A DNA stretch of 63,883 bases, the filler included, from Octopus bimaculoides (Eukaryota): NCBI RefSeq assembly GCF_001194135.2. It is 4 parts of 4 records of this genome, joined end to end, with 100 filler letters (N's around TTAATTAATTAA, not from the genome) between each part and the next. Parts side by side here need not be neighbours in the genome. Positions count along the whole stretch, not along the records: positions 1 to 29,098 come from NC_068982.1; 3 more parts are not named here. One strand, written 5' to 3'. Shown one piece after another: positions 1 to 26,720 of this stretch (position 1 is its first letter; each line of letters begins with the position of its first letter). Position numbers and translations under genes: made by a program. Under the pieces are notes generated by a model, which worked only from the letters and a program-made list of their open reading frames with translations, had not been told where the DNA came from and did not search any database.

Positions 1-17
1 TATACATATACATACAG

Positions 18-403
18 AAATACATGACAACAGCCGCCCTCATATCGCCAATATAACCAAGGAAGCCATTCAAACGCATGGATGGGAAGTGCTGCCCCAC
101 CTGCCATACTCTCCTGATTTGGCACCAACAGATGTCCACCTCTCTCCATCCCTTTCAAATGCTATGCACAGAGTTTCGTTCAATACTGATGCAAAATTGA
201 GAGCTTTGTTGGATCAATTTTTCGAGTTGAAATCAGGTGATTTCTACCAACGAGGTATTGAAAATCTTGTTGAACGTTGGGAAGAAGTTATAAACAATTG
301 AAGGGTGAATACAGTATTGATTAATTAGTTGTTATTTTTTACTAGACCTTTTAAAAAATTTAAATTTTAAAAAAATGGCGGGATCTTAATTACCAACCCA
401 ATA
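18..403 (+). mobile_element. Mariner transposase C-terminal remnant with right TIR
   Basis: HDNSRPH...GWEVLPHLPYSPDLAPTD...FYQRGIENLVERWEEV; ends ttaccaacccaaTA. Confidence 0.9.
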
Positions 404-537: not shown

Positions 538-830
538 TCATCATCATCATCCTCATCATCATCATCGTTTAACGTCTTTGCAGAATCAGTAGCCTAGTTC
601 CCTCTTCATTTCTGGTACTCCCTATTCCAAAGCTATTACCTTCCCAGGAGAGTTTATGCTTATGTGCTTTGCCTGTGAGGTCTCTGGCTGATGATCCTCT
701 CCATCTTACCTCTTGTGCACAACATACATCAACCCGTCTCCATTCAAATATCTCTACAATCTCGCTAGACCTATCTTTCAATGTGCCTACATTTAGAGTG
801 CCAAATCTGAAAGCTGGCAAAGAGGTATTG
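538..830 (-). mobile_element. RTE-clade LINE, APE endonuclease N-terminus fused to the 3' (GAT)n tail
   Basis: RFGTLNVGTLKDRSSEIVEIF...VDVCCAQEVRWRG followed directly by gacgttaaacgatgatgatg. Confidence 0.8.
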
Positions 831-1577
831 GAGATAACACAGGAAGGAGAGATCTTATTCAGTACCAGAAAAGAAGGTTCCCATGAACTTTGGTAACAGG
901 GATCATAATAGTTGTTGCTTTTAACCTACCTTCATTCAAATATGTTAGAGCTGTTAAGATTGTTATCTCTACTTGAGTGAGGAAACATTGAATATGAAAG
1001 TGTTGGGAGTGCTGTAAATATAATCGTAATGAGCCTAATGGGTGAAGCATCACTGACACTGAAAATATGTGTAAATAGATAAAAAATAATGAGTGGTCTA
1101 GAAAGAGATTTCCGGGTGGGCTGATACAAAAAGTCATTTTATGGGCTAGATCAAACAAGGAGTTATTTTAGAGAAAAGTATGAGATAAGTATATACATGT
1201 GGCCAAGAAACAGGTTAGTCATTGTGGGATTAGAAGAAACAAGAAAGAATTATTTTCAGAAGATAGATGAATTTGAATGAATGAGGTAATTAAGAAAAAA
1301 ACAAAAGAGATTCTTAACTTAGGTGTGCATATTTTCAAGTGTCATCAGCTGTCGAATGCATGGAATAAACTAACAAAGTCTGAGAGAGGTAGGGGGCAGG
1401 TGTGGAGACAACAGCCAGAAATGGATGAAGTAGGCAGCCTTAGCCTCAGGCTTCAAGGAGGAATAGCAGGGAATAGCCATTACAACAAGAGATAAGAGAG
1501 ATACAGACAGGAAAGAAATTATTTTCGTGAATGCTATGGAAAGGTTATTTTAAGGGCTAGAGCAAACAAGAAGGAGT

Positions 1578-2839: not shown

Positions 2840-3665
2840 TGTATATGCACACTGGCATTATCTATCCAATACAGCATACTAGCTTCATTTCTTCGAAACC
2901 TTTGCATATCTTCAGTAGTCATAGTCCATATCTCACTCCATTTAGCATAGCTGATTGTACACAGGCATCGTACAATCTGCCTTTCACTCTGAGGTAATAG
3001 CTCTGAACTTCACCCCACCTATTCTTATTCTAGCTGCTGTACTTTCAGAACAACCACCCCCATTTATAACTTGGTTACCCAAGTAACAGAAACTGTCCGC
3101 CACTTCTGAGGATCACCCCTGACATTTGAGGGAGTGTGTTTTTTGCACATTCTTTCTGTTTAATGTATCTGGACATTTTCCACATGTAAAGACTACTTTC
3201 TGCTAATCTTCCAGTGGTACTGCTGCACCTCTGATGTGTCCATAGCTTGTACTCAGTGGACTGTATGGAGTTTCTCTTGACACCTTTTGTAAATCTCGAG
3301 CCGGGCCATCTCCCGGAAAGGATCTGTGATTCTCCTACTTATTAATATTTTAGTCTTTGTTAAATTAGCTTTAAGGCTCTTTGATTCCAGTCTGTGATTC
3401 CTTACCTGCAATATCTTCTCGACTTCTGGTAGTGATTCAGCAATAAGAACAAGGTCATCGGTATATAGAAGCTCACAAAGCAGCCAGTCTTAAATTCCAC
3501 ACTTACAGCCTGGACGACTATGATAAACAAGAAGGAGCTAAGAACTGACCCCTGGTGGACTCCTTGTACACTAAACTCCTATACTCAATGGTGTTTCTCA
3601 CCTTATTGACAACATCCCTGTACATGGCTTGTACAGCCCTCACCAACCACTCATCTATCCCTAGC
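2840..3665 (-). mobile_element. RTE-clade LINE reverse transcriptase remnant
   Basis: Frameshifted EWLVRAVQAMY, HQGSVLSPLLFII, LLY(A)DDL, DSFCYLGNQV..GGGCSES..ARIRIG. Confidence 0.85.
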
Positions 3666-4309
3666 CTCCACTTTATCTCCAGCTAAGGAATCGGGATACC
3701 TGGATGATATTTTCCACCAAGATATTACAACTGTATCTGATTTTTCAAGTGCTTCAATTCTGTGTGTATACATATATATTTACTAGATTGCTGACATTTA
3801 TCAATGATTCTTCTGTTGTACTGATGGGCCATTTCCTATCATTAATGAAACTGTCATCATTCTTGTTGACATCGGTATGCTAGTGAAATAAGAAACCATA
3901 TCCCGTTTTCAACCATTGTGTTACATTCTGTTTCAAACAGGTTTATCTGACTTCCTTTTAGATCTTTCTACATTCCAATCTAATGATTCACAGTTATTTC
4001 AAATCAAAATATATCGCATATCTTGATTTAATATTCAGCTATTGAAATAACCTGTGTTCTGATATGTACACTCTTACAGATCAGTCTAAATATATATCTA
4101 TATGAGCACATATAAACAAGCAGTCAACGATAAAAAGTGACTGAGGTATTCACACACATATACACACAAAGAGTCTTTCCAAACTTTGTGGACTGACTCA
4201 CACTACTAAGTTCAGATGGAGAGAAAAGACTTCGGGTGGTGAGGCTCTGTCTATGTAGCCACTTGAGAGTATGCAACTCTTTCACATGAACTTTGGACAC
4301 AAAAATCTG

Positions 4310-4985
4310 CCACCATATCATTATCATCATCATCGTCGTCATCATCATTTAATGTCCATTATCCATGTTGGCATGTGTTAGCTGGTTTGACTAGAGCTGG
4401 TAACCACCTGGTTCCAGTTTGTTTTGGCTTGGTTTCATTCGGCCGAAGTTTACTTATATATCCTTGCTTGCGAAGACCTGTTGGGGCAAGTGAAATTGAA
4501 ATCGTAATTGAACCATATTCAATAACTGGCTCTTGTGCCAGTAGAGCACTAACAGCACTGTCTGAGCGTGCTCATTGCCAGAGCAGCTGTCTGGCTTCCA
4601 TGCTAGTGGCCCGTAAATAGCACCATTTGAGTATGATCGTTACCAGCGTCGCCTTCTGGCACTTGTGCTGGTGGCACGTTAGAAAATCATTCGAGTAAGG
4701 TTGTTGCCAGTGCCGCTGGACTGGCTCTTGTGTGGGTGGCATGTAAAAAACACCATTTTGAGCGTGGCTGTTGCCAGTACCGTGTGACTGTCCCTCGTGC
4801 TGGTGGCATGTAAAAGCACCCACTACACTCTTGGAGTGGTTGGTGTTAGGAAGGGCATCCAGCTGTAGAAACTCTGCCAAATCAGATTGGAGCCTGGTGT
4901 AGCCACCTGGTCCACCAGTCCTCAGTCAAATCATCCAACCCATGCTAGCATGGAAAGTGGACGTTAAACAATGATGATGATGATG
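4310..4985. mobile_element. RTE 3'UTR-derived repeat: plus copy (~4430-4985) with an inverted 3'-end fragment (~4310-4430)
   Basis: catgctagcatggaaagtggacgttaaa(GAT)n tail; tandem gccac/ggcac subrepeats; inverted tail on the left. Confidence 0.8.
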
Positions 4986-6644: not shown

Positions 6645-7519
6645 CGAGGTCTGATCAATAAGTATCCGGACTGTTGCCATAGTAATGAAGCTAAAGCATG
6701 CAGAGTAAAGCTGTTTGGCACAGATTGACCTTGAACTCTGTTGGGCATGCACACAAAGTTTTAACATTCTAGCTCACTTCCGCAGTTTACAGCAGTGCTT
6801 CGAAGGAAGGTTTGTAGCATGCGATTGTCGCATTGACCATGATAGAGAAAGTTGCCATGACGATACATGCTCAGAGGCCTAGGCAAAGTTGCAAAAAGTG
6901 TATGGAGAGGAGCCACACACAAAGGTACGAGTGGTTCAGACGTTTCCAAAATGGCCGAAAAATGTCGATATTGATAAACGTTCTGGGAGACCCATAACCA
7001 ACAGAAATGAGAAAAACATCTCAGATGTGCATGCATCTGTGAGTGGAAGTCGTTGAATCACCATACATGAGTTATCAGAGGATGTGCAAATCAGTTACAG
7101 TTCAGTCCATTATCACTGAAGATTTGGGAATAAGATACATGTCTGCGAATTTTGTGCCAAGACCGCTTTCAGCTGATCAAGGAGACACTCAGGTTTTAGT
7201 AACACAAGAGCTCCTGAATTGTATTAAGAACGATGAAAACATTTTGGAAACTTTGCGTAGGCCTCTGAGCAGGTATTGCCAAGATTTTGGCAAAATTTGA
7301 TGCAGATTCTCTGCTCAGTTTTCTCAGTTATGGTAAATGTGACCATCACACGCTACACACTTTCCGACTGAGCACTGATGCAAGCAGCAGAACTGAGCTA
7401 GAATGCTAAAACTTAGTGTGCATGCACAGCAGAGGTCAAACTCAATCTGTGCCAAGCAACTTCACTCTGCAGGCTTTAGCTTCATGACTATGGTCCGAAC
7501 ACTTATTGATCAGACCACA
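6645..7519 (+). mobile_element. Second mariner element, truncated transposase, ~140-bp terminal inverted repeats
   Basis: TA flanks; cgaggtctgatcaataagt... mirrored at 7385-7519; YEWFRRFQNGR, RSGRP, SANFVPRPLS motifs. Confidence 0.88.
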
Positions 7520-10793: not shown

Positions 10794-11037
10794 TTATACT
10801 TCAGTAGCTTCAACCTCTGGCTCATCTTCTGAATTACCGTAAAGAACTGTAGAATTATTGTTTATCTTGTTCATTTCTGCATCACGTTCTTTGATAACAC
10901 TGTCCAGATCTAATTTGGAGTTGTCTGCTGGCATTGGAAATGCTGTGTCACCATCAAAGTTGTAAAGATTGTTTGGTACAGCATTGATATTTTTATGATA
11001 CATACCATCAAATTCATTGTTAGTGTCTGAATACAAA
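10794..11037 (-). CDS. Cadherin-related protein, terminal coding exon LYSDTNNEFDG...EDEPEVEATEV*
   Basis: Acceptor cttgcttcttgtattattatAG, phase 2 matches the upstream exon; 80 codons then TAA; ends in T-E-V (class I PDZ-type motif). Confidence 0.85.
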
Positions 11038-11216
11038 CTATAATAATACAAGAAGCAAGATGAAAATATGTTAATAAATTAAAACCACAAATGTCATACT
11101 TCTCAAACATGTGCATGCACACACACACACATACATATGTATATATATATAATTGACAGAATGTGATTAAAAAATCCAAGGCTGTGAATAGTTTTCAGAA
11201 CATTTATAAAGAGAAG

Positions 11217-11264
11217 GTCTTACAGCTGTTTCCAGGATATTTTATATATCCCTTCATCAGAGAC
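11217..11264 (-). ncRNA. Minimal type I hammerhead ribozyme (PLE-type)
   Basis: gtct CTGATGA a gggata-tataaaa-tatcct g GAAAC agct GTA agac: stem I gtct/agac, intact core, palindromic stem III ACAGCTGT, GUA triplet. Confidence 0.8.
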
Positions 11265-11784
11265 GGTGTGAGAAAATGTTTGAGTAATAATTATTGTAGA
11301 GAAGATATGAAATACAATGGGAAGTGAAGGAATGAAAATAGAAGTGTGATACATAAGGGTATTGTATTTGCAGTTCCATTATTTAAGCAGAATGGTGTAT
11401 ATATAAGTTTCCTGTACCTTGTGTGCGAGTTCCAATGGTGTTTATATTTGGTCATTCCAAGCATAGAGTCTTGTAAACAGTGTTATTCGATCAAGGATTT
11501 TTTTTTTTTTTTTGGAGTGACTTAACAATTGGGAATGTGTTTATAAGGTAAAAATCAAAAACAGGAAGAGAACAGGAGGAAATAGAAGAAAAAAGGTTGG
11601 GAAATACAACAAATAAGTAAAGAAAGTGAAGATGTGTTAGCTAGTGGTCAGGATAAATGAGAGAAGGAAGGGGGAGAGGTGAGGGGGAGAGAGAGGAAGA
11701 GATGAGAGGGTAAAGAGTAAAAGAGTGTGAGGTATGTGAACAGGAGTGGTGTTATAGAGCTGCATTAAAGGATGGATACTGAAA

Positions 11785-12224
11785 ATCATCATCATCACCA
11801 GCATCATCATCATTTAACGTTCGCTTTCCATGCTAGCATGGGTTGGACGATTTGACTGGGGACTGGCGAACCGGATGGCTACACCAGACTCCAATATGAT
11901 CTGGCAGAGTTTCTACAGCTGGATGCCCTTCTTAATGCCAACCACTCTGAGAGTGTAGTGGGTGCTTTTCACGTACCACCGACATGAGGGTCAGTCCAGC
12001 AGTACGGGCAACGGTCATGCTCAAATGGTGTTTTTTACGTGCCACCTGCACAGGAGTCAGTCCAATGCTTTGTTCACATGCCACCGGCACAAGCGCCAGT
12101 AAGGCGAAGCTGGAAACGATCGCACTCAAATGGTACTTTTTACGTGCCACTGGCATGGGAGCGAGACCACTGCTCTGGCAGTGATCCCGCTTGGATGGTG
12201 CTGTTAGTGCTCCACTGGCACGGG
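11785..12224 (-). mobile_element. RTE 3'UTR-derived repeat
   Basis: (CAT)n ttaacgttcgctttccatgctagcatgggttgg...; inverted homologue of 4560-4985. Confidence 0.85.
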
Positions 12225-12559
12225 TAGAGAGAAAGTAAGGGTAGGGTGATGAGTAAGTGGGAATTAGTTTTGGTAATAAATTTGAGGTGGAATGAAGAAT
12301 ATAAATAATAAAGAATATAAGTCAAGTTGCTATAAATAGACATGTGTGATAGGTGAGCAGGAGAAGGAAGAAAGAATTTATATCTTTCAAGATGTATATA
12401 TACATACATACACATGTATCCATTCACTTATATAGACATAAACATACATTAACACATATATATGCATACAAACCCTTCTATGTTCACACACATTCGTATC
12501 TATTTTTGTATATATAAATTTTTGCATATATAAATGCATGTATGCAGACTCACACATGT

Positions 12560-12960
12560 TACAGTGGCCATTCTGTGGAAATGTTGTGCTCCCCTTACAT
12601 GAGCATCCTACCTCTGTCCCGGGTGTGGGCCTACTTATTAAAATCGTTTTTACCCTAGGTGCACAGATAAAGGAAATTTTCAGGGTATGCTTATTGAATA
12701 TTTTGCTGAATTTATCTGTATGGGAGAAGTATCTATCAACTAAGCTAAGAAAAATCTTACCTACTTGGGTTTTAACATTTAAAGAGAAGGGCGGTATAAA
12801 CCACAATACTTTCTGGTGCCACTTTCACTTGAAGGGGTTAGGTTCTGGTGTGTAATTAATTATATCCTTGAAACTGCTAGCAGCCAGTGCCTCATTGTAG
12901 TGCAGGATGGCAGCATCAAAAATCTCTTTGCTTGAAGATAAGCTGGAGATTCTTCCGCTG
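12560..12960 (-). mobile_element. Penelope-like element, RT thumb/linker remnant
   Basis: LSSSKEIFDAAILHYNEAL; WFIPPFSLNVKTQVGKIFLSLVDRYF...IFNKHTLKISF; CSCK. Confidence 0.8.
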
Positions 12961-13719
12961 ACGACCTTTACCAGGTTCTAGCAAAAGAATCTCCAGCCCC
13001 AACATGACAGACATCTACCAAATAGACTGTTTCCCACCACCTCCAATATAAAGTCCCACACACACATTGTACCCTTATGCTGCATACACACATAAATCCC
13101 CCACAATCTTAACCAATACAGAAATAAAACACTCTAGCAAACATGGTAATGAATGCCTACACCCCTTGCAAAAGTTATACAAACAGTACCACTACAAACA
13201 TCCCATTTCCACATGAATATAAACCTGAAAGACACACACAATTTCCACAAACACTTAACGATAACTCTTTCTGACTTACAGCATGGCCAATCCAGTGGCA
13301 ATGTCTTGGTACAAAGGGACATAACTCTCGACTAAATCCCCTACTTTGTTCGTTTCATCACCTTTTCACAACAATCGCAAACTGGATGTGTCCTTTCACC
13401 TCCAACAATAGAGAACAGTTGCCATATTTCGTTACATATCGGCTACCTCTGGTGAGCATAGGGTTGTATGATTGGATTGTTACCTAACTCTCTGCCATAC
13501 CCCTGGCGAGAAACCAATTGGTAAGATCAGCCGTGATGGTTATATAATACTGTACACTTTGGATAATATAACCACTCTGTTGACAGATATACGAGTGCAT
13601 CTTTTTTCTGACTTATGGACTTTTAGATAACTTACGCATGATATATATATTTATATACAGATGTATATATGTTTATATATATATATATAAATACACACAC
13701 ACATATACATATCTGTGTA

Positions 13720-13855
13720 CAAGATAGGCTTCCCTACAGTTTCCACTAACCTGATGCTACTCACAAGGCATTGGTCAGCCTGTGACAGTAGTAGAAGACA
13801 CTTGCCAAAAGTATCATCCAGCAAGATCAGCCCTAAAGGCACATGGTAGCAAAGC
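13720..13855 (-). mobile_element. SINE family A fragment
   Basis: cacaaggcattggtcagcc..gtagaagacacttgccaa. Confidence 0.7.
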
Positions 13856-14105
13856 AATCACACAGCTACTGCTACACTTATTGCTGATTGATATAATCTA
13901 GTTATGCTACTATTTGTTTTATCTGTTCTAGAATGAAGGAAATTAACTTTACCTTAGTGATATTTGAACTCAGAACACTGATATACCAATTTAGTTCCAA
14001 TAAAACATTCAGCTTCCATCTGTTTTTACCCTTTATCTCATAATAAATTATGGCAAACTTTTTGCAACAAACTTTTCATTTTAAAATTTGTTTTGTAAAA
14101 CATAC

Positions 14106-14171
14106 CTCTCTTTGTCTGGTAAGGGACTACCCATGTCATTTTCATCGAAATTGTTGTATAATGGATTAATC
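14106..14171 (-). CDS. Cadherin-related protein, cytoplasmic exon INPLYNNFDENDMGSPLPDKE(S)
   Basis: Acceptor atttttcAG, donor GTatgt; 66 nt, phase 2 to 2; NPLY motif. Confidence 0.88.
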
Positions 14172-15382
14172 CTGAAAAATATTTATATAAAACACAAATT
14201 TTTTGAAAACTTTTGTTATTGATAAATAAATATGTTTTTTCAGAGTTTTACTTCACAAAAGATATATAAAAAAATTTCTGAGAAAATTCTTCTTCCTCTT
14301 ATGTCACTGGCAATGTAAACATATATTATTACATTATTGACAGCGTAAATAATATAAACATATAAAACTTTCTATTTGGATAATGCAAAATTAATGATAT
14401 GCACCTTGACATGGAGTTTCAAATTTTGAACAGTTATTTTTCCTCTGCTTTCTTAGAAATTGGTAGATGTATAAGAGAGAAGTTTTGTCTCAAAACACAC
14501 AACCTTAATTAGCAGCAAATTGCATGAAAAAATTCTATCTGCTATGAATACTCTTTGGATCCTTTTATTGAGGAATGAATTATTATGAAATCAGGACTTC
14601 TAAATGCAGACACTGATGCATGACTAGATAATTTAGAGTTGGATGCCTTTCTGTAAATAAGTACTCAACAGTGAAAGAGAAGTGGAACCTGTTACAAAGT
14701 TATGCTTTCTAAAAGGGACATATAATTGCTACAACAGATTTTGAGCAGACTTACAAATAGAAAGTTTGTTTTGGTAGAATATATCATCAGAGTATCAGAA
14801 TATATTAGGCACAAGCTTGGAATGCTCTGCAAAATTGCAGGCAGCTNNNNNNNNNNNNNNNNNNNNNNNNNNNNNNNNNNNNNNNNNNNNNNNNNNNNNN
14901 NNNNNNNNNNNNNNNNNNNNNNNNNNNNNNNNNNNNNNNNNNNNNNNNNNNNNNNNNNNNNNNNNNNNNNNNNNNNNNNNNNNNNNTCAGAGTTCAATAC
15001 AACTACAGTGATTACTGTCTTTGACACAAAGCTACAAATATGTAGCGGAGAGAACTCAGATTGTAGTCATGGAAGATATACAACAAAGCATTTTCTTTGA
15101 TGCTTCAAAAATTCTACTGATCCTTAATAACAAGTTTCTAATTTGGTTCAAAGCAAGAAAATTCAGGGATAGGGCAAGTGACTTAAAACAATACCAGTAC
15201 ATGACTGGTACTTTATCTTATCAATTCTGGACTGAGGAAATGTAAAGATTGGTTGTTGTCATAGTTATGGAACCAATTATAACCTACATGTAATTAAATA
15301 ATCAAACATTTATAAAAAATAATAGGAGTTAGAAAGGAGAGAGAAGGAGGAAAAGGGGAGCAAGAGAGAAAGAAAAACATAC

Positions 15383-15440
15383 TGTCCATCTGAAAACAAA
15401 TTGGTTCCAGGGAATGCATCTTCAGCTATTTCATCTGATG
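15383..15440 (-). CDS. Cadherin-related protein, cytoplasmic exon SDEIAEDAFPGTNLFSDG(Q)
   Basis: Acceptor atatcattgcAG, donor GTatgt; 58 nt, phase 1 to 2, the only open frame; PGTN motif as in the CDHR2 tail. Confidence 0.88.
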
Positions 15441-15732
15441 CTGCAATGATATAAATATTAAATAATGACCATAGTTTTCTTTGACAGATGAAATTCTTTC
15501 ATGCACTGAATACACAGACAAACACAATTTAGAATACATATACAAAATAGAAAGTGCAAAATTAAATTATTAAAAGAAATGCAAAAATGGATATGAAGTG
15601 ATGATCAGTCTAACTAGTTCAATTAAATTCAATGCATATATATAGATATATATATATATAATAAAAACAAATGTCCAAAGTATATATTAGCTGTAAAACA
15701 AATCAGTCAGTCAGTCTGTCTGTTTGTGTATA

Positions 15733-18579: not shown

Positions 18580-18925
18580 TTACCAAGGTTGTTTAATGCC
18601 CTTAAGGTATTTGAACATGCAGCTAATCTTATGCATACAGGAAAGGCGAAGGTCTAGTTTATTATTTAATAAATTTTCACTATTAGATCTTAAAATTTCA
18701 AACAGTTCCATGAAGTAAAGTTTGCATCCACATCTATCGTTTAAGTATGGTTTTATGTCCCAACTTAAATCAAATTTAACATCGTCATTTTTGAGATCCC
18801 AGATCTTCATGGCTACAGACGTCTTGCCAGTCCTGCATCTTAATTTAAAAGATGAATAGTGGTTGTGTAAGCACTCCTTAAAATTTACAGTGCAGCCAAT
18901 ATAAGTGTAAGTATTGGTCGCTGTA
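18580..18925 (-). mobile_element. PLE GIY-YIG endonuclease remnant (type 2)
   Basis: TYIGCTVNFKECLHNHYSSF...IWDLK...SWDIKPY...CGCKL...LLN..SCMH. Confidence 0.8.
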
Positions 18926-19330
18926 GTATATATATATTGGTTAGTTGTCCATAAGTTAGAAGTAGAGGTGTCCAACAGTAACAGTAACAAAAGGAAACAT
19001 ACACAAAAATATGTTGGAGCAATAGAGGTTCCTTTAAAGCCAAGGTTAAATAATCATAGTTCCTCTTTTAGGATCCCAGAGATGTGCAATGTAACAGTAT
19101 TACCCAGCAACATACGGCGATTAAAAAAAGAGAGAATGCCATACAAAATTAACTGGAAGCTGCTTGAACAATCAGGACCATACCTCAATGGAAGCAGATA
19201 CTGCAAACTTGCCGTGGCAGAGAGGAAAATGACTAAAAAATTCGCATGACCTAGAAGTCTTCTTGAATTCATATAGTGATGTTTTTAGCTGATGCCCTCA
19301 TGACAGAAAATTTGCTTTGGAAATGTGGTC
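18914..19330 (+). mobile_element. PLE GIY-YIG endonuclease remnant (type 3)
   Basis: KYVGAIEVPLKPRLNNHSSSF...YKINWKLL...PYLNGSRYCKL..AE. Confidence 0.8.
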
Positions 19331-19893: not shown

Positions 19894-20107
19894 NNNNNNN
19901 NNNNNNNNNNNNNNNNNNNNNNNNNNNNNNNNNNNNNNNNNNNNNNNNNNNNNNNNNNNNNNNNNNNNNNNNNNNNNNNNNNNNNNNNNNNNNNNNNNNN
20001 NNNNNNNNNNNNNNNNNNNNNNNNNNNNNNNNNNNNNNNNNNNNNNNNNNNNNNNNNNNNNNNNNNNNNNNNNNNNNNNNNNNNTATATATATATATATA
20101 TATATCC

Positions 20108-20310
20108 TAATCATCATCATTTAAAGTCTGTTGTCCATGCTAGCAAGGGTTGGACTGTTTAACCAGGACTTGTAAGCTGAGGGGCTGTACCAGACTCCAG
20201 TCTGATTTGGCATGGCTTCTACTGCTGGATGCTCTTCCTAACACCAATCACTCTGAGAGTGTAATGGGTGTTTTTGCATGCCATCAACATGGGTGTTAGT
20301 TATATGACAT
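20108..20310 (-). mobile_element. RTE 3'UTR-derived repeat
   Basis: (CAT)n tttaa..ccatgctagcaagggttgg...gctggatgctcttcctaacaccaa. Confidence 0.8.
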
Positions 20311-22232: not shown

Positions 22233-22868
22233 AGGTGTCTTGTGGAAATTTAGAACCTGGGTTCTCATTCCTAAGGTATTTTTCGATGTTAATATTATTA
22301 TTATTCAGCTCACTGCTTGGAATCGAACTCGGAATCTTGGGGTACTAACCCCAGGATTCCAAGTTCTTAACCACTATGCCATATTCCCATGGGCATTTAT
22401 GGAGTGAATTTTAGGGCTTATAAATCTAATATTTTCGTATCATTCCTTAATACCAGTTCCCACATGCTACTCATATCTGCACTCGGTCTACTTAGGAGAT
22501 TGTTGTGTCCTAGCATATGTGCTGCTTCTTTTAATTTTCGTATTTTCCAGCGGTGACCTATGTCTATTATTTTAACTTCATCCCACAGGGGCAGGTGGTC
22601 TCCATTTTTCCACACATCATCAGCTACCCCCAATTTATCAATATCTCCTCGTGTCACAGCTTTGCGATGTTCGTTTAACCTTATTTTGAGGGGGTGTCAT
22701 TGTTTTGCCTTTGTATAACCTACCACAGCTCAATGGGATGGAGTAAATACAGTCTTTGGTCATATTCTCTTCTATTGGTGGTTTTACTCAAAGGAGATAT
22801 TTACGAAGTGTTGTATTACTCTTGAATCTTTTCGGAGAGGCCTTTCACATAGGGTAGACAGACTGTGG
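22233..22868 (-). mobile_element. Penelope-like element 3' region, inverted arm
   Basis: STVCLPYVKGLSEKIQ, GIY-YIG C-half ...LPLWDEVKIID..HRWKIRKLKEAAHM; mirror of 22869-23487. Confidence 0.9.
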
Positions 22869-23350
22869 ATACAAAAGATATGCGGCCCATATGACATCAG
22901 GACAACATTCAAGAGTAATACAACACTTCATAAATATCTCCTTTGAGTAAAACCACCAATAGAAGAGAATACGACCAAAGACTGAGTGTACTCCATCCCA
23001 CTGAGCTGTGGTAGGTTATACAAAGGCAAAACATGCCACCCCCTCAAAATAAGGGTAGATGAACATCGCAAAACTGTGACATGAGGAGATATTGATAAAT
23101 CGGGTGTAGGTGATGATGTATGGAAAAATGGAGACCACCTCCCCCTGTGGGATGAAGTTAAGATAATAGACAGAGAACACCAAAGGAAAATACAAAAACT
23201 AAAAGAAGCAGCACATATGCTAGGACACAACAACCTTCTAAGTAGACTGAGTGCAGATATGAGTAGCATGTGGGAACCGGTATTAAGGAAGGATAGGAAA
23301 ATATTAGATTTATAAGCCCTAAAATTCACTCCATAATTGCCACAAGAATA

Positions 23351-23399
23351 TGGCGTAGTGGTTAAGAGCTACTAACCTGAAGATTCCCAATTCGATTCC
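23351..23399 (+). promoter_or_regulatory. tRNA-like Pol III A-box/B-box within the PLE 3' region
   Basis: A-box TGGCGTAGTGG; B-box (a)TTCGATTCC, and GAGTTCGATTCC in the inverted arm at 22319-22330. Confidence 0.6.
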
Positions 23400-23480
23400 A
23401 AGGAGTGACCTGAATAATAATAATAATAATAACATCAAAAAATACCTTAGGAATGAGAACCAGGTTCTAAATTTCCCCAA

Positions 23481-23526
23481 GACACCTGATGAAGGTTGGA
23501 GGGTATATCAGCTGAAACGTTGTTAA
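23481..23526 (+). ncRNA. Minimal hammerhead ribozyme, stem I partly degenerate
   Basis: gacac CTGATGA a ggttg-gagggtatat-cagct GAAAC GTT gtt; palindromic AACGTT stem III. Confidence 0.7.
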
Positions 23527-23845
23527 CAACAAACAAGATGAGGACAAATATCCGTCAAATGTAAATAATGTAAAAATAAAATTATACTCCAATTTTGAAT
23601 TAACAGCTTCTCAAATAAATTCGTACTCCCTTCCACAATATTACAATTCACTTGGAAAGTCGTCCTAAATGTCAATGTTACAAAACTTGTTAGTAATATT
23701 TTACCTCATCTATGAATGTATTTTAACTTTCATTTCAGAACACAAAAGTTTCTTTGAATTGAAATTATTCCATATGAAATTTTCAAAAGTTTATATCTAG
23801 TAAATATTTTTTTAAAATTAGTTCATCAGTTTAAGAACTACCAAC

Positions 23846-23970
23846 CTGCGATTACTTGCATAAAATAGAATCATCGTAATGGTCAATATGAAAACCAACA
23901 CCACAATGACCGTAATAAAAACTATGAAATTCTTCTCCTTGTTGTCAACAGTTACAAATGGTTCAGATTC
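23846..23970 (-). CDS. Cadherin-related protein, transmembrane exon ESEPFVTVDNKEKNFIVFITVIVVLVFILTITMILFYASNR(R)
   Basis: Acceptor tttcttgctcttctAG, donor GTtggt; 125 nt, phase 0 to 2; ~23-residue hydrophobic helix followed by basic residues. Confidence 0.9.
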
Positions 23971-24513: not shown

Positions 24514-24567
<54 letters not shown>

Positions 24568-26072
24568 CATTTAACATTTGCTTTCCATGCTGGCATGGGT
24601 TGGATGGTTTGACAAAAATCTGGTAAGTTGGGGGGGGGGGCTGCACTAGGTCCCAGTCTGATATAGTAAGGTTTCTATGGTTGGTGCCCTTCCCAATGTC
24701 AACCACTTCAAAAGTGTAGCGGGTGGTTTTTTATGTGCCAATGATCTGACACTGGCATCAGCCATGACTACGGTCTCACTTGGCTTGACAGGTCTACACA
24801 AGCATGGTATATCATCACCAAAGGTCTTAGTCACCTGTCGCTGCTTCCATGAGGCATAATGCTCAAATGGTGCTTTTTACATGCCACCAACATGGGTGCC
24901 AGTCAGATGGCACAGGCATTGGCCACAACTAAGATTTCACTCGGTTTGACAGGTCTTCACAAGTACAGCATATCGCCCAACGATTGAAGGTGCTTTTAAT
25001 GAGCCAGTTATGTGCCACTGGCATGGGTACTGGTCAGACAGCACTGGCATTGACCATGACTACAATTTCGTTCGGTTTGACAGGACTTCACAAGCAAAGC
25101 ATATAGCCCAATGATTGAAGGGTTCTTTCAATGGGTCACTTACACAACATTGGCAGTGACAACGATTCCGATATCACTTGGCTTGATGGGTCTTCTCAAG
25201 CATGACATATCTCCAAAGGTCTCGGTCACTTGTCATTGTCTCTGTGAGGACCAACATTCGATGATCGTGCTTCACCACCTCACCCCATGTCTTCCTGGGT
25301 CTACCTCTTCCACAGGTTCCCTCTACTGTCCTCATCCATGTGCATCACATGACCATACCAGTGCAGTCATCTCTCTTGCACACCATATCTGATGCTTCTT
25401 ATGTCCAAATTTTCTCTTAGGATGCTTACACTCTGTTGTGGATGCACACTGACATTACACATCAAGCAGAGCATGCTAGCTTCATTTCTTTTTAGCATGG
25501 CTGTTCGCAAATATGTGTCATACAGACTGCCTTTCACTCCAAGTGAGAAGTCCTTTGTTACCAGCAGCTCTTTGTTATCAGGAGCTCTCTGAACTTTGCC
25601 CAGCCTTCTCTTATTTTAGCAGCTATGCTTTCAGAGAATCCACCTGAACTACTGACTTGGTCACCTAGGTAACAGAAGCTATCAACTTCTTGTAATTTTT
25701 CCCCTGGAATGTGATGGAATCTATTTTCTGTACATTTTTGGTGTTTATTGTACCTGCACACCTTCCACACACAAAAACTATTTTCCCTGTTAACCTTCCT
25801 CTAATATTGCTAAACCTCTTATGTAGCCCTAGCTTACACAGCAGACACCTTTTGGAGTTTCTCTCTATGCCTTTTCTACTGGCCAAGCAGGACCATATAC
25901 CTGAAGGAATTTATGATTTGTCTGCCTTCCTACTTAGTAAGACTTTGATTTTTGCTAGGTTAACTCTAATGCACTTTGATTCTAGACGTTGCTTCCACAC
26001 CTGAATCTTCTTCTCTAGTTCTGGTAGTGATTCAGCTATTAGAGAAAGGTCATCAGAATAGAGGAGCTCCCA
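24568..26072 (-). mobile_element. 5'-truncated RTE LINE: RT C-terminus contiguous with a ~700-bp subrepeated 3'UTR and tail
   Basis: WELLYSDDLSLIAESLPELEKKIQVWK..., VDSFCYLGDQVSSSGG, WYGHVM, RGRPRKTW, then the UTR repeat. Confidence 0.9.
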
Positions 26073-26131
<59 letters not shown>

Positions 26132-26135
<4 letters not shown>

Positions 26136-26255
26136 GAAAGTATTAAATAGCTGAAAAGACTGAACAGCATGATACTGTAGGCTGCAGGTAGTAAGCCTGC
26201 TATGCATGCAAGACTCCAGAAGCTCCAACAAAACCTGTGATAAAGAGATAATAGC

Positions 26256-26256
<1 letters not shown>
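26132..26256 (+). mobile_element. Very short 3' end of an R4/Dong-like LINE flanked by (TAA)n
   Basis: RKVLNS* followed by a UTR similar to 61975-62060 (gtagtaa..cc..cta). Confidence 0.5.
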
Positions 26257-26315
<59 letters not shown>

Positions 26316-26319
<4 letters not shown>

Positions 26320-26720
26320 TAGAAATTAGAAAAATGTGGAATCTGAAGACGAAAACAATACCTATTGTCATAGGTGCCCTGGGAATGACAGCGAAACGGG
26401 CTGATTACTACCTAGCTCAGATACCAGGAAACCCCAAAATGGCTGAAGTTCAAAAGATAGTGCTCATGGGAACTGCCCATATCCTACGTAAAATACTGTC
26501 TATGTGATCTCAAATTTTAAAGCAAACACATAATTTTCTTATGGTTTCTTAAACATTCACTTGAACAAAACTGTACAAATCCAAATATATGGTACCCTAG
26601 GCATAACACCTACATGAACTTCTAACTTGTTGTCTCTTGAGGTCTCTGGGTGAGACTTGGATCCAACTTGTACAAATGCAAAACAAAAGTCAAACATAAA
26701 ATAATAATAATAATAATAAA
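26316..26720 (+). mobile_element. R4/Dong-like (restriction-like endonuclease) LINE 3' end
   Basis: KIEIRKMWNLKTKTIPIVIGALG...VQKIVLMGTAHILRKILSM*; 3'UTR ending in (TAA)n. Confidence 0.88.

What the first reader, a model, noticed from the sequence alone, without database searches (positions are those of the whole stretch)
11217..11264. Near-canonical hammerhead ribozyme in sense orientation in the cadherin's last intron
Seen: the minus strand has an intact CUGAUGA/GAAA core, stem I gtct/agac, a 6-7-bp stem II and a GUA triplet. It lies ~180 nt upstream of the terminal exon's acceptor, on the same strand as the pre-mRNA. Stem III (ACAGCUGU) is palindromic, which is the dimer-dependent minimal form known from Penelope-like pLTRs. 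An A.G mismatch closes stem II. Inference: a PLE relic that could cleave the host pre-mRNA and influence last-exon inclusion or 3' end formation.
Basis: partly seen in the sequence, partly recalled or inferred. Interest (0 to 1): 0.75.

Follow-up and report, generated by a model that had tools for sequence, protein, structure and literature searches.

The report
Fossil hammerhead ribozyme in cadherin intron
The hammerhead ribozyme motif is really there, in the sense strand of the last intron of an octopus cadherin gene, but it is one old copy of a roughly 335-base mobile repeat and shows no sign of working for the host gene.

Summary
Observation confirmed. Minus strand 11264-11217 reads GUCU|CUGAUGA|A|GGGAUAU-AUAAA-AUAUCCU|G|GAAA|CAGCUG|UA|AGAC. 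That is an intact hammerhead core with a GUA cleavage triplet, a 4-bp helix I, a 7-bp helix II and a palindromic helix III. It lies in the sense strand of the 3,068-nt last intron (14105-11038) of a cadherin-family gene, 178 nt upstream of the acceptor.

It is neither a chance motif nor a host-selected element. It belongs to a ~335-nt dispersed repeat (window 11484-11147). I found further copies in O. vulgaris (a head-to-head inverted pair), in O. bimaculoides, and at the same intron position of the syntenic O. sinensis gene. Its architecture matches the minimal, dimer-dependent hammerheads described for Penelope-like elements.

In O. sinensis the core carries G8-to-A plus two stem-breaking changes. 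Divergence inside the motif equals that of the rest of the element. The intact state in the window is compatible with drift (P=0.30). The window holds one copy only, so there is no dimer partner. The monomer is predicted to misfold.

Verdict: an ordinary fossil of a known kind. The idea that it regulates the gene is not supported.

The parts
11217..11264 (-). Type I minimal hammerhead motif: helix I 11264-11261/11220-11217; core CUGAUGA 11260-11254; unpaired A 11253; helix II 11252-11246/11240-11234 with loop 11245-11241; unpaired G 11233; GAA 11232-11230; helix III palindrome ACAGCUGU 11229-11222; A17 at 11221; predicted cleavage between 11221 and 11220
   Evidence: family alignment
11147..11484 (-). 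Full-length copy of a ~335-nt dispersed repeat that carries the hammerhead about 60-70 nt from its 3' end; 33% G+C, no reading frame
   Evidence: nhmmer with the family profile covers model positions 1-335; independent copies in L001 (two), L007, and at the same position in L005/L006
11108..11150 (.). (TA)n(TG)n microsatellite abutting the 3' end of the repeat; the copies in L001 and L005/L006 also abut (CA)n or (TA)n tracts
11492..11505 (-). Poly(A) tail of a different, upstream retroposed sequence; it marks the 5' boundary of the hammerhead repeat
11038..14105 (-). Last intron of the cadherin-family gene (3,068 nt; GT at 14105-14104, AG at 11039-11038). Besides the hammerhead repeat it holds a SINE (~12230-11785) and a GIY-YIG fragment (12977-12560)
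10794..11037 (-). Last exon, coding part (SLYSDTNNEFDGMYHK...EATEV, stop at 10796-10794)
14106..14171 (-). Penultimate exon (INPLYNNFDENDMGSPLPDKE)
15382..15447 (-). Cytoplasmic exon (ASDEIAEDAFPGTNLFSDGQ); exact ends not determined
23842..23970 (-). Transmembrane exon (ESEPFVTVDNKEKNFIVFITVIVVLVFILTITMILFYASNRRL); exact ends not determined

Best explanation
The motif is the hammerhead of one solo, full-length copy of a ~335-nt non-coding retroelement of the Penelope-like world. The unit resembles a pLTR or a retrozyme monomer.

The copy inserted next to a microsatellite in the last intron of a cadherin-family gene. This happened before the window's lineage and Octopus sinensis separated. Since then it has drifted neutrally.

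In the source element the ribozyme presumably processed tandem or multimeric element transcripts. It would do so by forming a double hammerhead through the 8-nt palindromic helix III (inferred from the literature on this ribozyme class).

In this intron there is a single copy. As a monomer it is predicted to fold into an inactive alternative, and it most likely does nothing for the host gene. That it still reads as intact is survival by chance.
For: Shown:
- The motif belongs to a repeat family. Window 11484-11147 matches L001 6917-7257(+), L001 6924-6651(-), L007 8840-9168 and L005/L006, with E-values from 1e-56 to 1e-102.
- Two independent insertions (window and L007) start within a few bases of each other, so the unit is discrete, about 335 nt.
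- The O. vulgaris copies form a head-to-head inverted pair of 5'-truncated units. That arrangement is described as typical of PLEs (PMC8557442).
- Every copy with a readable 3' flank abuts a microsatellite.
- The architecture fits the published PLE minimal hammerhead (PMC4209133): helix I 4 bp, helix II 7 bp, an extra nucleotide after A9, a palindromic helix III.
- A canonical PLE in the same window and in L001 carries a min-HHR at a similar distance from its 3' end.
- The window and O. sinensis locus L005 are collinear over about 10 kb at 85-94% identity, and the repeat sits at the same place.
- The O. sinensis copy has CUGAUAA (G8 to A), plus G-to-A changes in helix I and helix II.
- Identity between window and L005 is 93.8% in the motif, 92.2% in the 5' part of the element, 84.5% in the 3' part and 86.2% in the upstream intron.
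- Polarised changes: the window lineage has 0 in the motif against 1.2 expected (P=0.30). The O. sinensis lineage has 3 against 2.2 expected.
- The hammerhead fold of the monomer scores -5.0 kcal/mol against an MFE of -10.3 kcal/mol, and the MFE pairs CUG of the core with CAG of helix III. Two copies cofold at -25.9 kcal/mol with an 8-bp intermolecular helix III.
- There is no second copy in the window, nor in the whole 56-kb O. sinensis gene.

From the literature: monomers of such min-HHRs gave no detectable cleavage in vitro, and dimers gave low activity (PMC4209133).
Against: - No RT/GIY-YIG reading frame was found next to any copy, so the link to PLEs rests on architecture and arrangement.
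- Only five sequences were available. They show no compensatory base-pair changes, so there is no covariation support that the family's ribozyme was ever active.
- The 10.1/11.1 position is A.G, U.G or U.U in all copies rather than the G-C of published PLE hammerheads.
- Whether L005 is the strict orthologue or a close paralogue is not settled, and the window's species is unknown. The O. bimaculoides homologue L007 matches better in some segments and has a 3.9-kb gap in this intron.
- No cleavage or expression data exist.
Confidence: 0.8

Rival explanations
1. Domesticated intronic ribozyme. The hammerhead cleaves the cadherin pre-mRNA co-transcriptionally and modulates splicing to the last exon or 3' end formation. 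This would resemble what is proposed for the conserved intronic hammerheads of amniotes.
For: The motif is in the sense strand, 178 nt upstream of the last acceptor. The core is intact and identical to the subfamily consensus. The window lineage has no derived change in the 48 nt.
Against: - The copy at the same position in O. sinensis has an inactivating G8A and two broken pairs.
- There is no excess conservation.
- It is a single copy of a dimer-dependent form, and the monomer misfolds by 5.3 kcal/mol.
- There is no Watson-Crick 10.1-11.1 pair and no loop-loop contacts.
- Monomeric min-HHRs are inactive in vitro (PMC4209133).
Confidence: 0.04
2. This is the 3' end of a 5'-truncated autonomous Penelope-like element (a true PLE relic), not a discrete non-autonomous unit.
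For: The hammerhead lies 60-90 nt from the 3' end, as in the canonical PLE of the same window. 5'-truncated copies in inverted pairs occur. The flank is a microsatellite.
Against: Two independent insertions share the same 5' end at about 335 nt. No copy extends into a reading frame. The translated 5' part shows no similarity to the PLE endonuclease.
Confidence: 0.13
3. A chance match to the hammerhead consensus in AT-rich intron DNA.
For: There is no Rfam hit. The folding z-score is only -0.54. Tens of such matches are expected per whole genome by chance.
Against: The same motif, with the same helices, sits in homologous repeat copies at three other loci in three other species. Hammerhead-descriptor hits are about 50-fold enriched in the 291 kb of octopus DNA examined.
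Confidence: 0.01

Closest known systems
Minimal hammerheads (min-HHRs) of Penelope-like elements (Cervera and de la Pena 2014, PMC4209133)
   Same: Type I topology. Helix I of 4-5 bp without a defined loop 1. Long helix II (7-8 bp). An extra nucleotide between A9 and helix II. A short, palindromic helix III that implies a dimeric active form. Many divergent copies per genome, most of them solo. Position near the element's 3' end.
   Different: There is also an unpaired nucleotide on the 3' side of helix II, so the usual G10.1-C11.1 pair next to the core is replaced by A.G, U.G or U.U. No RT-EN reading frame was found next to any copy.
Non-LTR retrozymes of animals (Cervera and de la Pena 2020, PMC7229834; Li et al. 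2026 preprint, 10.64898/2026.07.22.740005)
   Same: A non-coding unit of about 300 bp, low G+C (33%), with a type I hammerhead. Solo monomers are known. The preprint derives these elements from PLE pLTRs.
   Different: No tandem arrangement appears in any of the four insertions seen. The ribozyme is of the minimal rather than the canonical type I form. The preprint reports depletion of retrozymes from introns in Xenopus, whereas this copy is intronic.
Sm-alpha, the hammerhead-bearing SINE-like repeat of Schistosoma (as summarised in PMC6155905)
   Same: A short, dispersed, non-autonomous repeat with an internal type I hammerhead.
   Different: There is no sequence relationship. The Sm-alpha ribozyme is a canonical, active type I hammerhead with loop-loop contacts.
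Conserved intronic hammerheads of amniotes (RECK, CTCL, DTNB; PMC6155905)
   Same: Intronic, in the sense strand, and derived from retroelement hammerheads.
   Different: Those are conserved, in one case totally, across birds and mammals. This one is already mutated in the core in a congeneric species and shows neutral divergence.

Membership tests
Hammerhead ribozyme, type I | Conserved core C3-U4-G5-A6-N7-G8-A9 ... G12-A13-A14, with the A15.1-U16.1 pair and H17 | tested here: met
   CUGAUGA, GAA, A...U and A17 are all present
Hammerhead ribozyme, type I | Three helices around the core, with helix I open (type I) | tested here: met
   Helix I 4 bp, helix II 7 bp, helix III 2 bp plus a 4-nt loop, or 8 bp as a dimer
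Hammerhead ribozyme, type I | Watson-Crick 10.1-11.1 pair (usually G-C) stacked on the core | tested here: not met
   A.G in the window and L005, U.G in L007, U.U in the L001 copies
Hammerhead ribozyme, type I | Match to a curated covariance model (Rfam Hammerhead families) | tested here: inconclusive
   No hit even at E up to 10 on 91 nt. The models also miss an intact PLE min-HHR in L001
Hammerhead ribozyme, type I | Site-specific self-cleavage | not testable with these tools
   Needs in vitro transcription or RNA end mapping
PLE minimal hammerhead (PMC4209133) | Helix I 4-5 bp, helix II 7-8 bp, an extra nucleotide between position 9 and 10.1 | tested here: met
   4 bp, 7 bp, and A at 11253
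PLE minimal hammerhead (PMC4209133) | Palindromic 15.2-16.2 and loop 3, giving a dimeric helix III | tested here: met
   ACAGCUGU is invariant in all five copies. Cofolding gives an 8-bp intermolecular helix
PLE minimal hammerhead (PMC4209133) | Belongs to a multi-copy consensus family within the genome | tested here: met
   Four independent insertions in about 230 kb of octopus DNA
PLE minimal hammerhead (PMC4209133) | Compensatory changes between copies | tested here: not met
   0 pairs with changes on both sides among five sequences. The sample is too small to weigh heavily
Penelope-like element | Reading frame for RT plus GIY-YIG endonuclease flanked by pLTRs | tested here: not met
   No reading frame adjoins any copy. 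The translated 5' part shows no similarity to the PLE endonuclease
Penelope-like element | Inverted pairs of 5'-truncated copies, and insertion next to microsatellites | tested here: met
   Head-to-head pair in L001 at 6651-6924(-) and 6917-7257(+). Microsatellite flanks
Non-LTR retrozyme | Tandem repeats of 150-450-bp units, each with a type I hammerhead | tested here: not met
   All copies are solo or inverted, none tandem. The unit size of 335 nt and 33% G+C do fit
Non-LTR retrozyme | Expression as small circular RNAs | not testable with these tools
   No transcriptome access
Domesticated intronic hammerhead (amniote type) | Conservation at the orthologous intron beyond neutral divergence | tested here: not met
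   The O. sinensis copy has G8A and two broken pairs. Identity is 93.8% in the motif against 92.2% in the adjacent part of the element. P=0.30 for zero changes in the window lineage

The most novel reading that the evidence does not exclude
In the window's lineage the still-intact copy has been co-opted. Slow co-transcriptional self-cleavage, helped by a chaperone or by pairing through the palindromic helix III with transcripts of other family copies, would lower splicing to the last exon or change 3' end choice of this cadherin gene. O. sinensis, with its dead core, would then be a natural loss-of-function comparison.
Probability: 0.03. Interest if true: 0.7.

Novelty: new member of a known kind. 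Interest (0 to 1): 0.2.

Why it matters
The result has modest value.

It adds an octopus example to the known class of minimal hammerheads spread by Penelope-type retroelements. It delimits a ~335-nt hammerhead-bearing repeat shared by at least four Octopus genomes.

It also shows that an intact-looking ribozyme in the sense strand of an intron can be explained by neutral survival. For genome scans the practical lesson is that Rfam's hammerhead models do not detect this class.

If the ribozyme did act on the host transcript, it would be an invertebrate case of a domesticated intronic hammerhead. The evidence points the other way.

Tried and rejected
- Rfam at gathering and at permissive thresholds gave no hammerhead. 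A control on L001 shows the models miss this class.
- Self-BLAST of the flanks found no second copy in the window.
- The word-indexed protein search with the last-exon peptide found nothing, and a regex for cadherin-repeat motifs found none in the window. For a while this suggested that the 'cadherin' context was wrong. The exhaustive phmmer search, Pfam and tblastn overturned that. The window holds only the juxtamembrane, transmembrane and cytoplasmic exons.
- I tested the idea that the 5' part of the repeat is a decayed endonuclease C-terminus. No similarity was found.
- CTGATGA...GAAA at 23486-23525 first looked like a junction artefact. Alignment with L001 copies shows it is the degenerate hammerhead of a second PLE family.
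- An exact-pattern scan of the metagenome collection for the family found 0 matches.
- The ENA assembly loci L002 and L003 share only the PLE with the window and hold no copy of the family.
- ARAGORN found no tRNA.
- Absence of the element in O. bimaculoides L007 cannot be judged because of a 3.9-kb assembly gap.

Full report
WHAT IS IN THE SEQUENCE

On the minus strand, 11264 to 11217 reads GUCU CUGAUGA A GGGAUAU AUAAA AUAUCCU G GAAA CAGCUG U A AGAC. This is a type I hammerhead:
- helix I is GUCU/AGAC;
- both core boxes are intact;
- helix II has 7 bp, closed by G.U;
- one unpaired nucleotide sits on each side of helix II, which can also be read as an A.G pair at 10.1/11.1;
- A15.1-U16.1 and C15.2-G16.2 flank AGCU, so ACAGCUGU is an 8-nt palindrome;
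- the cleavage triplet is GUA, with the scissile bond between 11221 and 11220.

A descriptor scan that I wrote finds this as the only such motif in the window. I ran the same scan on 40 Mb of random sequence with the window's dinucleotide make-up, both strands. It gave 4 hits with helix I of at least 4 bp and helix II of at least 5 bp, and none with helix II of at least 7 bp. The motif is therefore far beyond chance for a 29-kb window, though not for a whole genome.

Rfam 15 reports no hammerhead at the gathering threshold, nor at E up to 10 on 91 nt. It also fails on an intact Penelope-type minimal hammerhead that I found later in locus L001. The negative Rfam result is therefore uninformative.

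GENE CONTEXT

A word-indexed protein search with the putative last-exon peptide found nothing, and no cadherin-repeat motifs occur in any frame.

The exhaustive phmmer search changed that. The 80-residue peptide matches the extreme C-termini of four proteins at 67-77% identity. Two of these (P0123, P0125) contain Pfam Cadherin domains.

tblastn places six collinear exons on the minus strand:

| Exon | Coordinates |
|---|---|
| upstream exon | 28558-28490 |
| transmembrane exon | 23970-23842 |
| small exon | about 18020-17985 |
| cytoplasmic exon | 15447-15382 |
| penultimate exon | 14171-14106 |
| last exon | 11037-10797 |

The last intron runs from GT at 14105 to AG at 11039-11038. It is 3,068 nt long, and a serine codon is split AG|T across it. 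The cadherin-repeat exons lie outside this piece.

THE MOTIF BELONGS TO A REPEAT FAMILY

A 20-kb O. vulgaris locus, fetched for another reason (L001), contains two copies of the sequence around the hammerhead. They lie head to head: 6924-6651 on the minus strand and 6917-7257 on the plus strand.

Loci fetched through the cadherin homologues added three more copies:
- one in O. bimaculoides at an unrelated place (L007 8840-9168);
- two in O. sinensis (L005 65975-66305 and L006 31280-31610).

With a profile built from five copies, the window copy spans 11484-11147 and covers model positions 1-335. The window copy and the independent L007 copy begin within a few bases of each other. This argues for a discrete unit of about 335 nt rather than randomly truncated ends of a long element.

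The unit has 33% G+C and no reading frame. The hammerhead ends about 60-70 nt before its 3' end. Every copy with a readable 3' flank abuts a (TA)n, (TG)n or (CA)n tract.

The hammerhead, together with the 20-30 nt after it, is the best conserved part of the unit. GAAACAGCUGUAAGAC is invariant in all five copies.

WHICH KIND OF ELEMENT

The architecture is the one described for the minimal hammerheads of Penelope-like elements (PMC4209133): helix I of 4-5 bp, helix II of 7-8 bp, an extra nucleotide after A9, and a palindromic 15.2-16.2/loop 3.

Head-to-head pairs of 5'-truncated copies, and insertion next to microsatellites, are described as PLE hallmarks (PMC8557442).

The window also holds a canonical PLE of another family. 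It is an inverted pair, 22392-22705(-) and 23028-23569(+). Its relatives carry the RT C-terminus followed by a GIY-YIG endonuclease. That element has its own minimal hammerhead about 170 nt after the stop codon. The hammerhead is degenerate in the window (23486-23525) and intact in L001: GACAC CUGAUGA A GGCUG...CAGCC GAAA CG UU GUGUU. Octopus PLEs therefore do carry such ribozymes near their 3' ends.

No copy of the 335-nt family adjoins a reading frame, and none is tandem. The family thus fails the defining test for an autonomous PLE and also the tandem criterion of non-LTR retrozymes (PMC7229834). A recent preprint derives retrozymes from PLE pLTRs (10.64898/2026.07.22.740005). I file the unit as a PLE-type non-autonomous element, pLTR-like or retrozyme-like, and I mark this as an inference.

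One departure from the published consensus is worth noting. All copies have an unpaired nucleotide on both sides of helix II. The G10.1-C11.1 pair is thus replaced by A.G, U.G or U.U.

Five sequences give no compensatory changes.

DOES IT WORK FOR THE HOST?

The window and O. sinensis L005 are collinear over about 10 kb, including the last three exons, the introns and the 3' flank. Identity is 85-94%. The repeat occupies the same position, about 100 nt before the acceptor. The insertion therefore predates the split of these two sequences.

In O. sinensis the motif reads AUCU CUGAUAA A GAGAUAU...:
- G8 of the core is A, with no compensating change at C3;
- one helix I pair is broken;
- one helix II pair is broken.

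Identity between the window and L005:

| Segment | Identity |
|---|---|
| hammerhead motif | 93.8% (45 of 48) |
| 5' part of the element | 92.2% |
| 3' part of the element | 84.5% |
| upstream intron | 86.2% |
| last-exon coding sequence | 90.1% |

I polarised the changes with the L007 copy as outgroup. The window lineage has 7 derived changes in 280 nt outside the motif and 0 inside, where 1.2 are expected (P=0.30). The O. sinensis lineage has 13 outside and 3 inside, where 2.2 are expected. Nothing here departs from neutrality.

The O. bimaculoides homologue L007 cannot be scored, because its last intron has a 3.9-kb gap.

FOLDING

The monomer's minimum-free-energy structure (-10.3 kcal/mol) keeps helices I and II. 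It pairs CUG of the core with CAG of helix III. The hammerhead fold scores -5.0 kcal/mol.

Two copies cofold at -25.9 kcal/mol with an 8-bp intermolecular helix III. This is the double-hammerhead arrangement.

The folding energy of the region is not unusual (z = -0.54).

No second copy exists in the window, nor in the whole 56-kb O. sinensis gene.

Published tests of such minimal hammerheads found no detectable cleavage for single motifs, and low activity for dimers, mostly at non-physiological Mg2+ (PMC4209133).

CONCLUSION

The functional inference does not hold. This is a neutral fossil of a known class of ribozyme-bearing retroelement.

The closest functional analogy, the conserved intronic hammerheads of amniotes (PMC6155905), differs in the feature that matters, which is conservation.

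CAVEATS
- The window's species is unknown.
- L005 may be a close paralogue rather than the strict orthologue.
- Only five family members could be examined.
- No experimental data bear on cleavage.

Noticed in passing
window 22392-22705 (-) and 23028-23569 (+); L001 10073-10640 and 11830-11994: [quoted passage not shown] It lies in the intron downstream of the cadherin transmembrane exon. Relatives (P0019, P0084) carry the RT C-terminus plus the endonuclease.
   Followed up: partly
window 23486-23525 (+); L001 11925-11878 (-): A second minimal hammerhead that belongs to that PLE, about 170 nt after its stop codon. The window copy is degenerate (a 2-nt deletion weakens helix I) and is antisense to the gene. 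The O. vulgaris copy is intact (GACAC CUGAUGA A GGCUG..CAGCC GAAA CG UU GUGUU). Rfam misses it.
   Followed up: yes
window 12977-12560 (-); 18583-19053 (-) and 18911-19246 (+): Fragments of a different GIY-YIG protein family (WFIPPFS...KIFNK...CSCK...; YIGCT...), possibly remnants of N-terminal-endonuclease (Naiad-type) PLEs. One lies inside the last intron and one forms an inverted pair. The Pfam GIY-YIG match is only E=0.005.
   Followed up: partly
window 23344-23400 (+) and 22385-22325 (-): A stretch with tRNA-like A and B boxes (GGCGTAGTGGTTAAGAGC...TTCGATTCC) inside the 3' region of the PLE. ARAGORN calls no tRNA.
   Followed up: partly
L007 77371-77410 (+): Another hammerhead-like motif, of a different family, in O. 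bimaculoides: CCA CUGAUGA G GUCACA GAAG UGUGAC GAAA GAAC UC UGG. It lies in the 3' flank of the cadherin homologue.
   Followed up: no
window plus loci L001-L007 (291 kb): The relaxed hammerhead descriptor gives 5 hits in 291 kb, against about 0.1 expected from random sequence. This suggests that hammerhead-bearing repeats are very abundant in Octopus genomes.
   Followed up: partly
window 12230-11785 (-), 4311-4391, 20083-20275, 24533-24613: Copies of an abundant octopus SINE with a (CAT)n/(ATG)n end; one lies inside the last intron. In O. bimaculoides L007 another copy sits directly upstream of the last acceptor region (71618-71778).
   Followed up: no
window 2-298 (+), 572-925 (-), 3256-3682 (-), 25561-26411 (-): Fragments of a mariner-type transposase, an AP-endonuclease-type LINE ORF and LINE reverse transcriptases. 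Numerous N runs (assembly gaps) and long TA/TG/AAT microsatellites are also present.
   Followed up: no
window 10797-11037 versus L005, L006, L007: The cadherin homologues are mosaics. The window's penultimate exon is closest to O. bimaculoides L007 (95%), while its transmembrane and last exons are closest to O. sinensis L005 (91% and 78%). This suggests paralogy or gene conversion in a cadherin gene cluster. All tails end in the PDZ-ligand-like EATEV.
   Followed up: no
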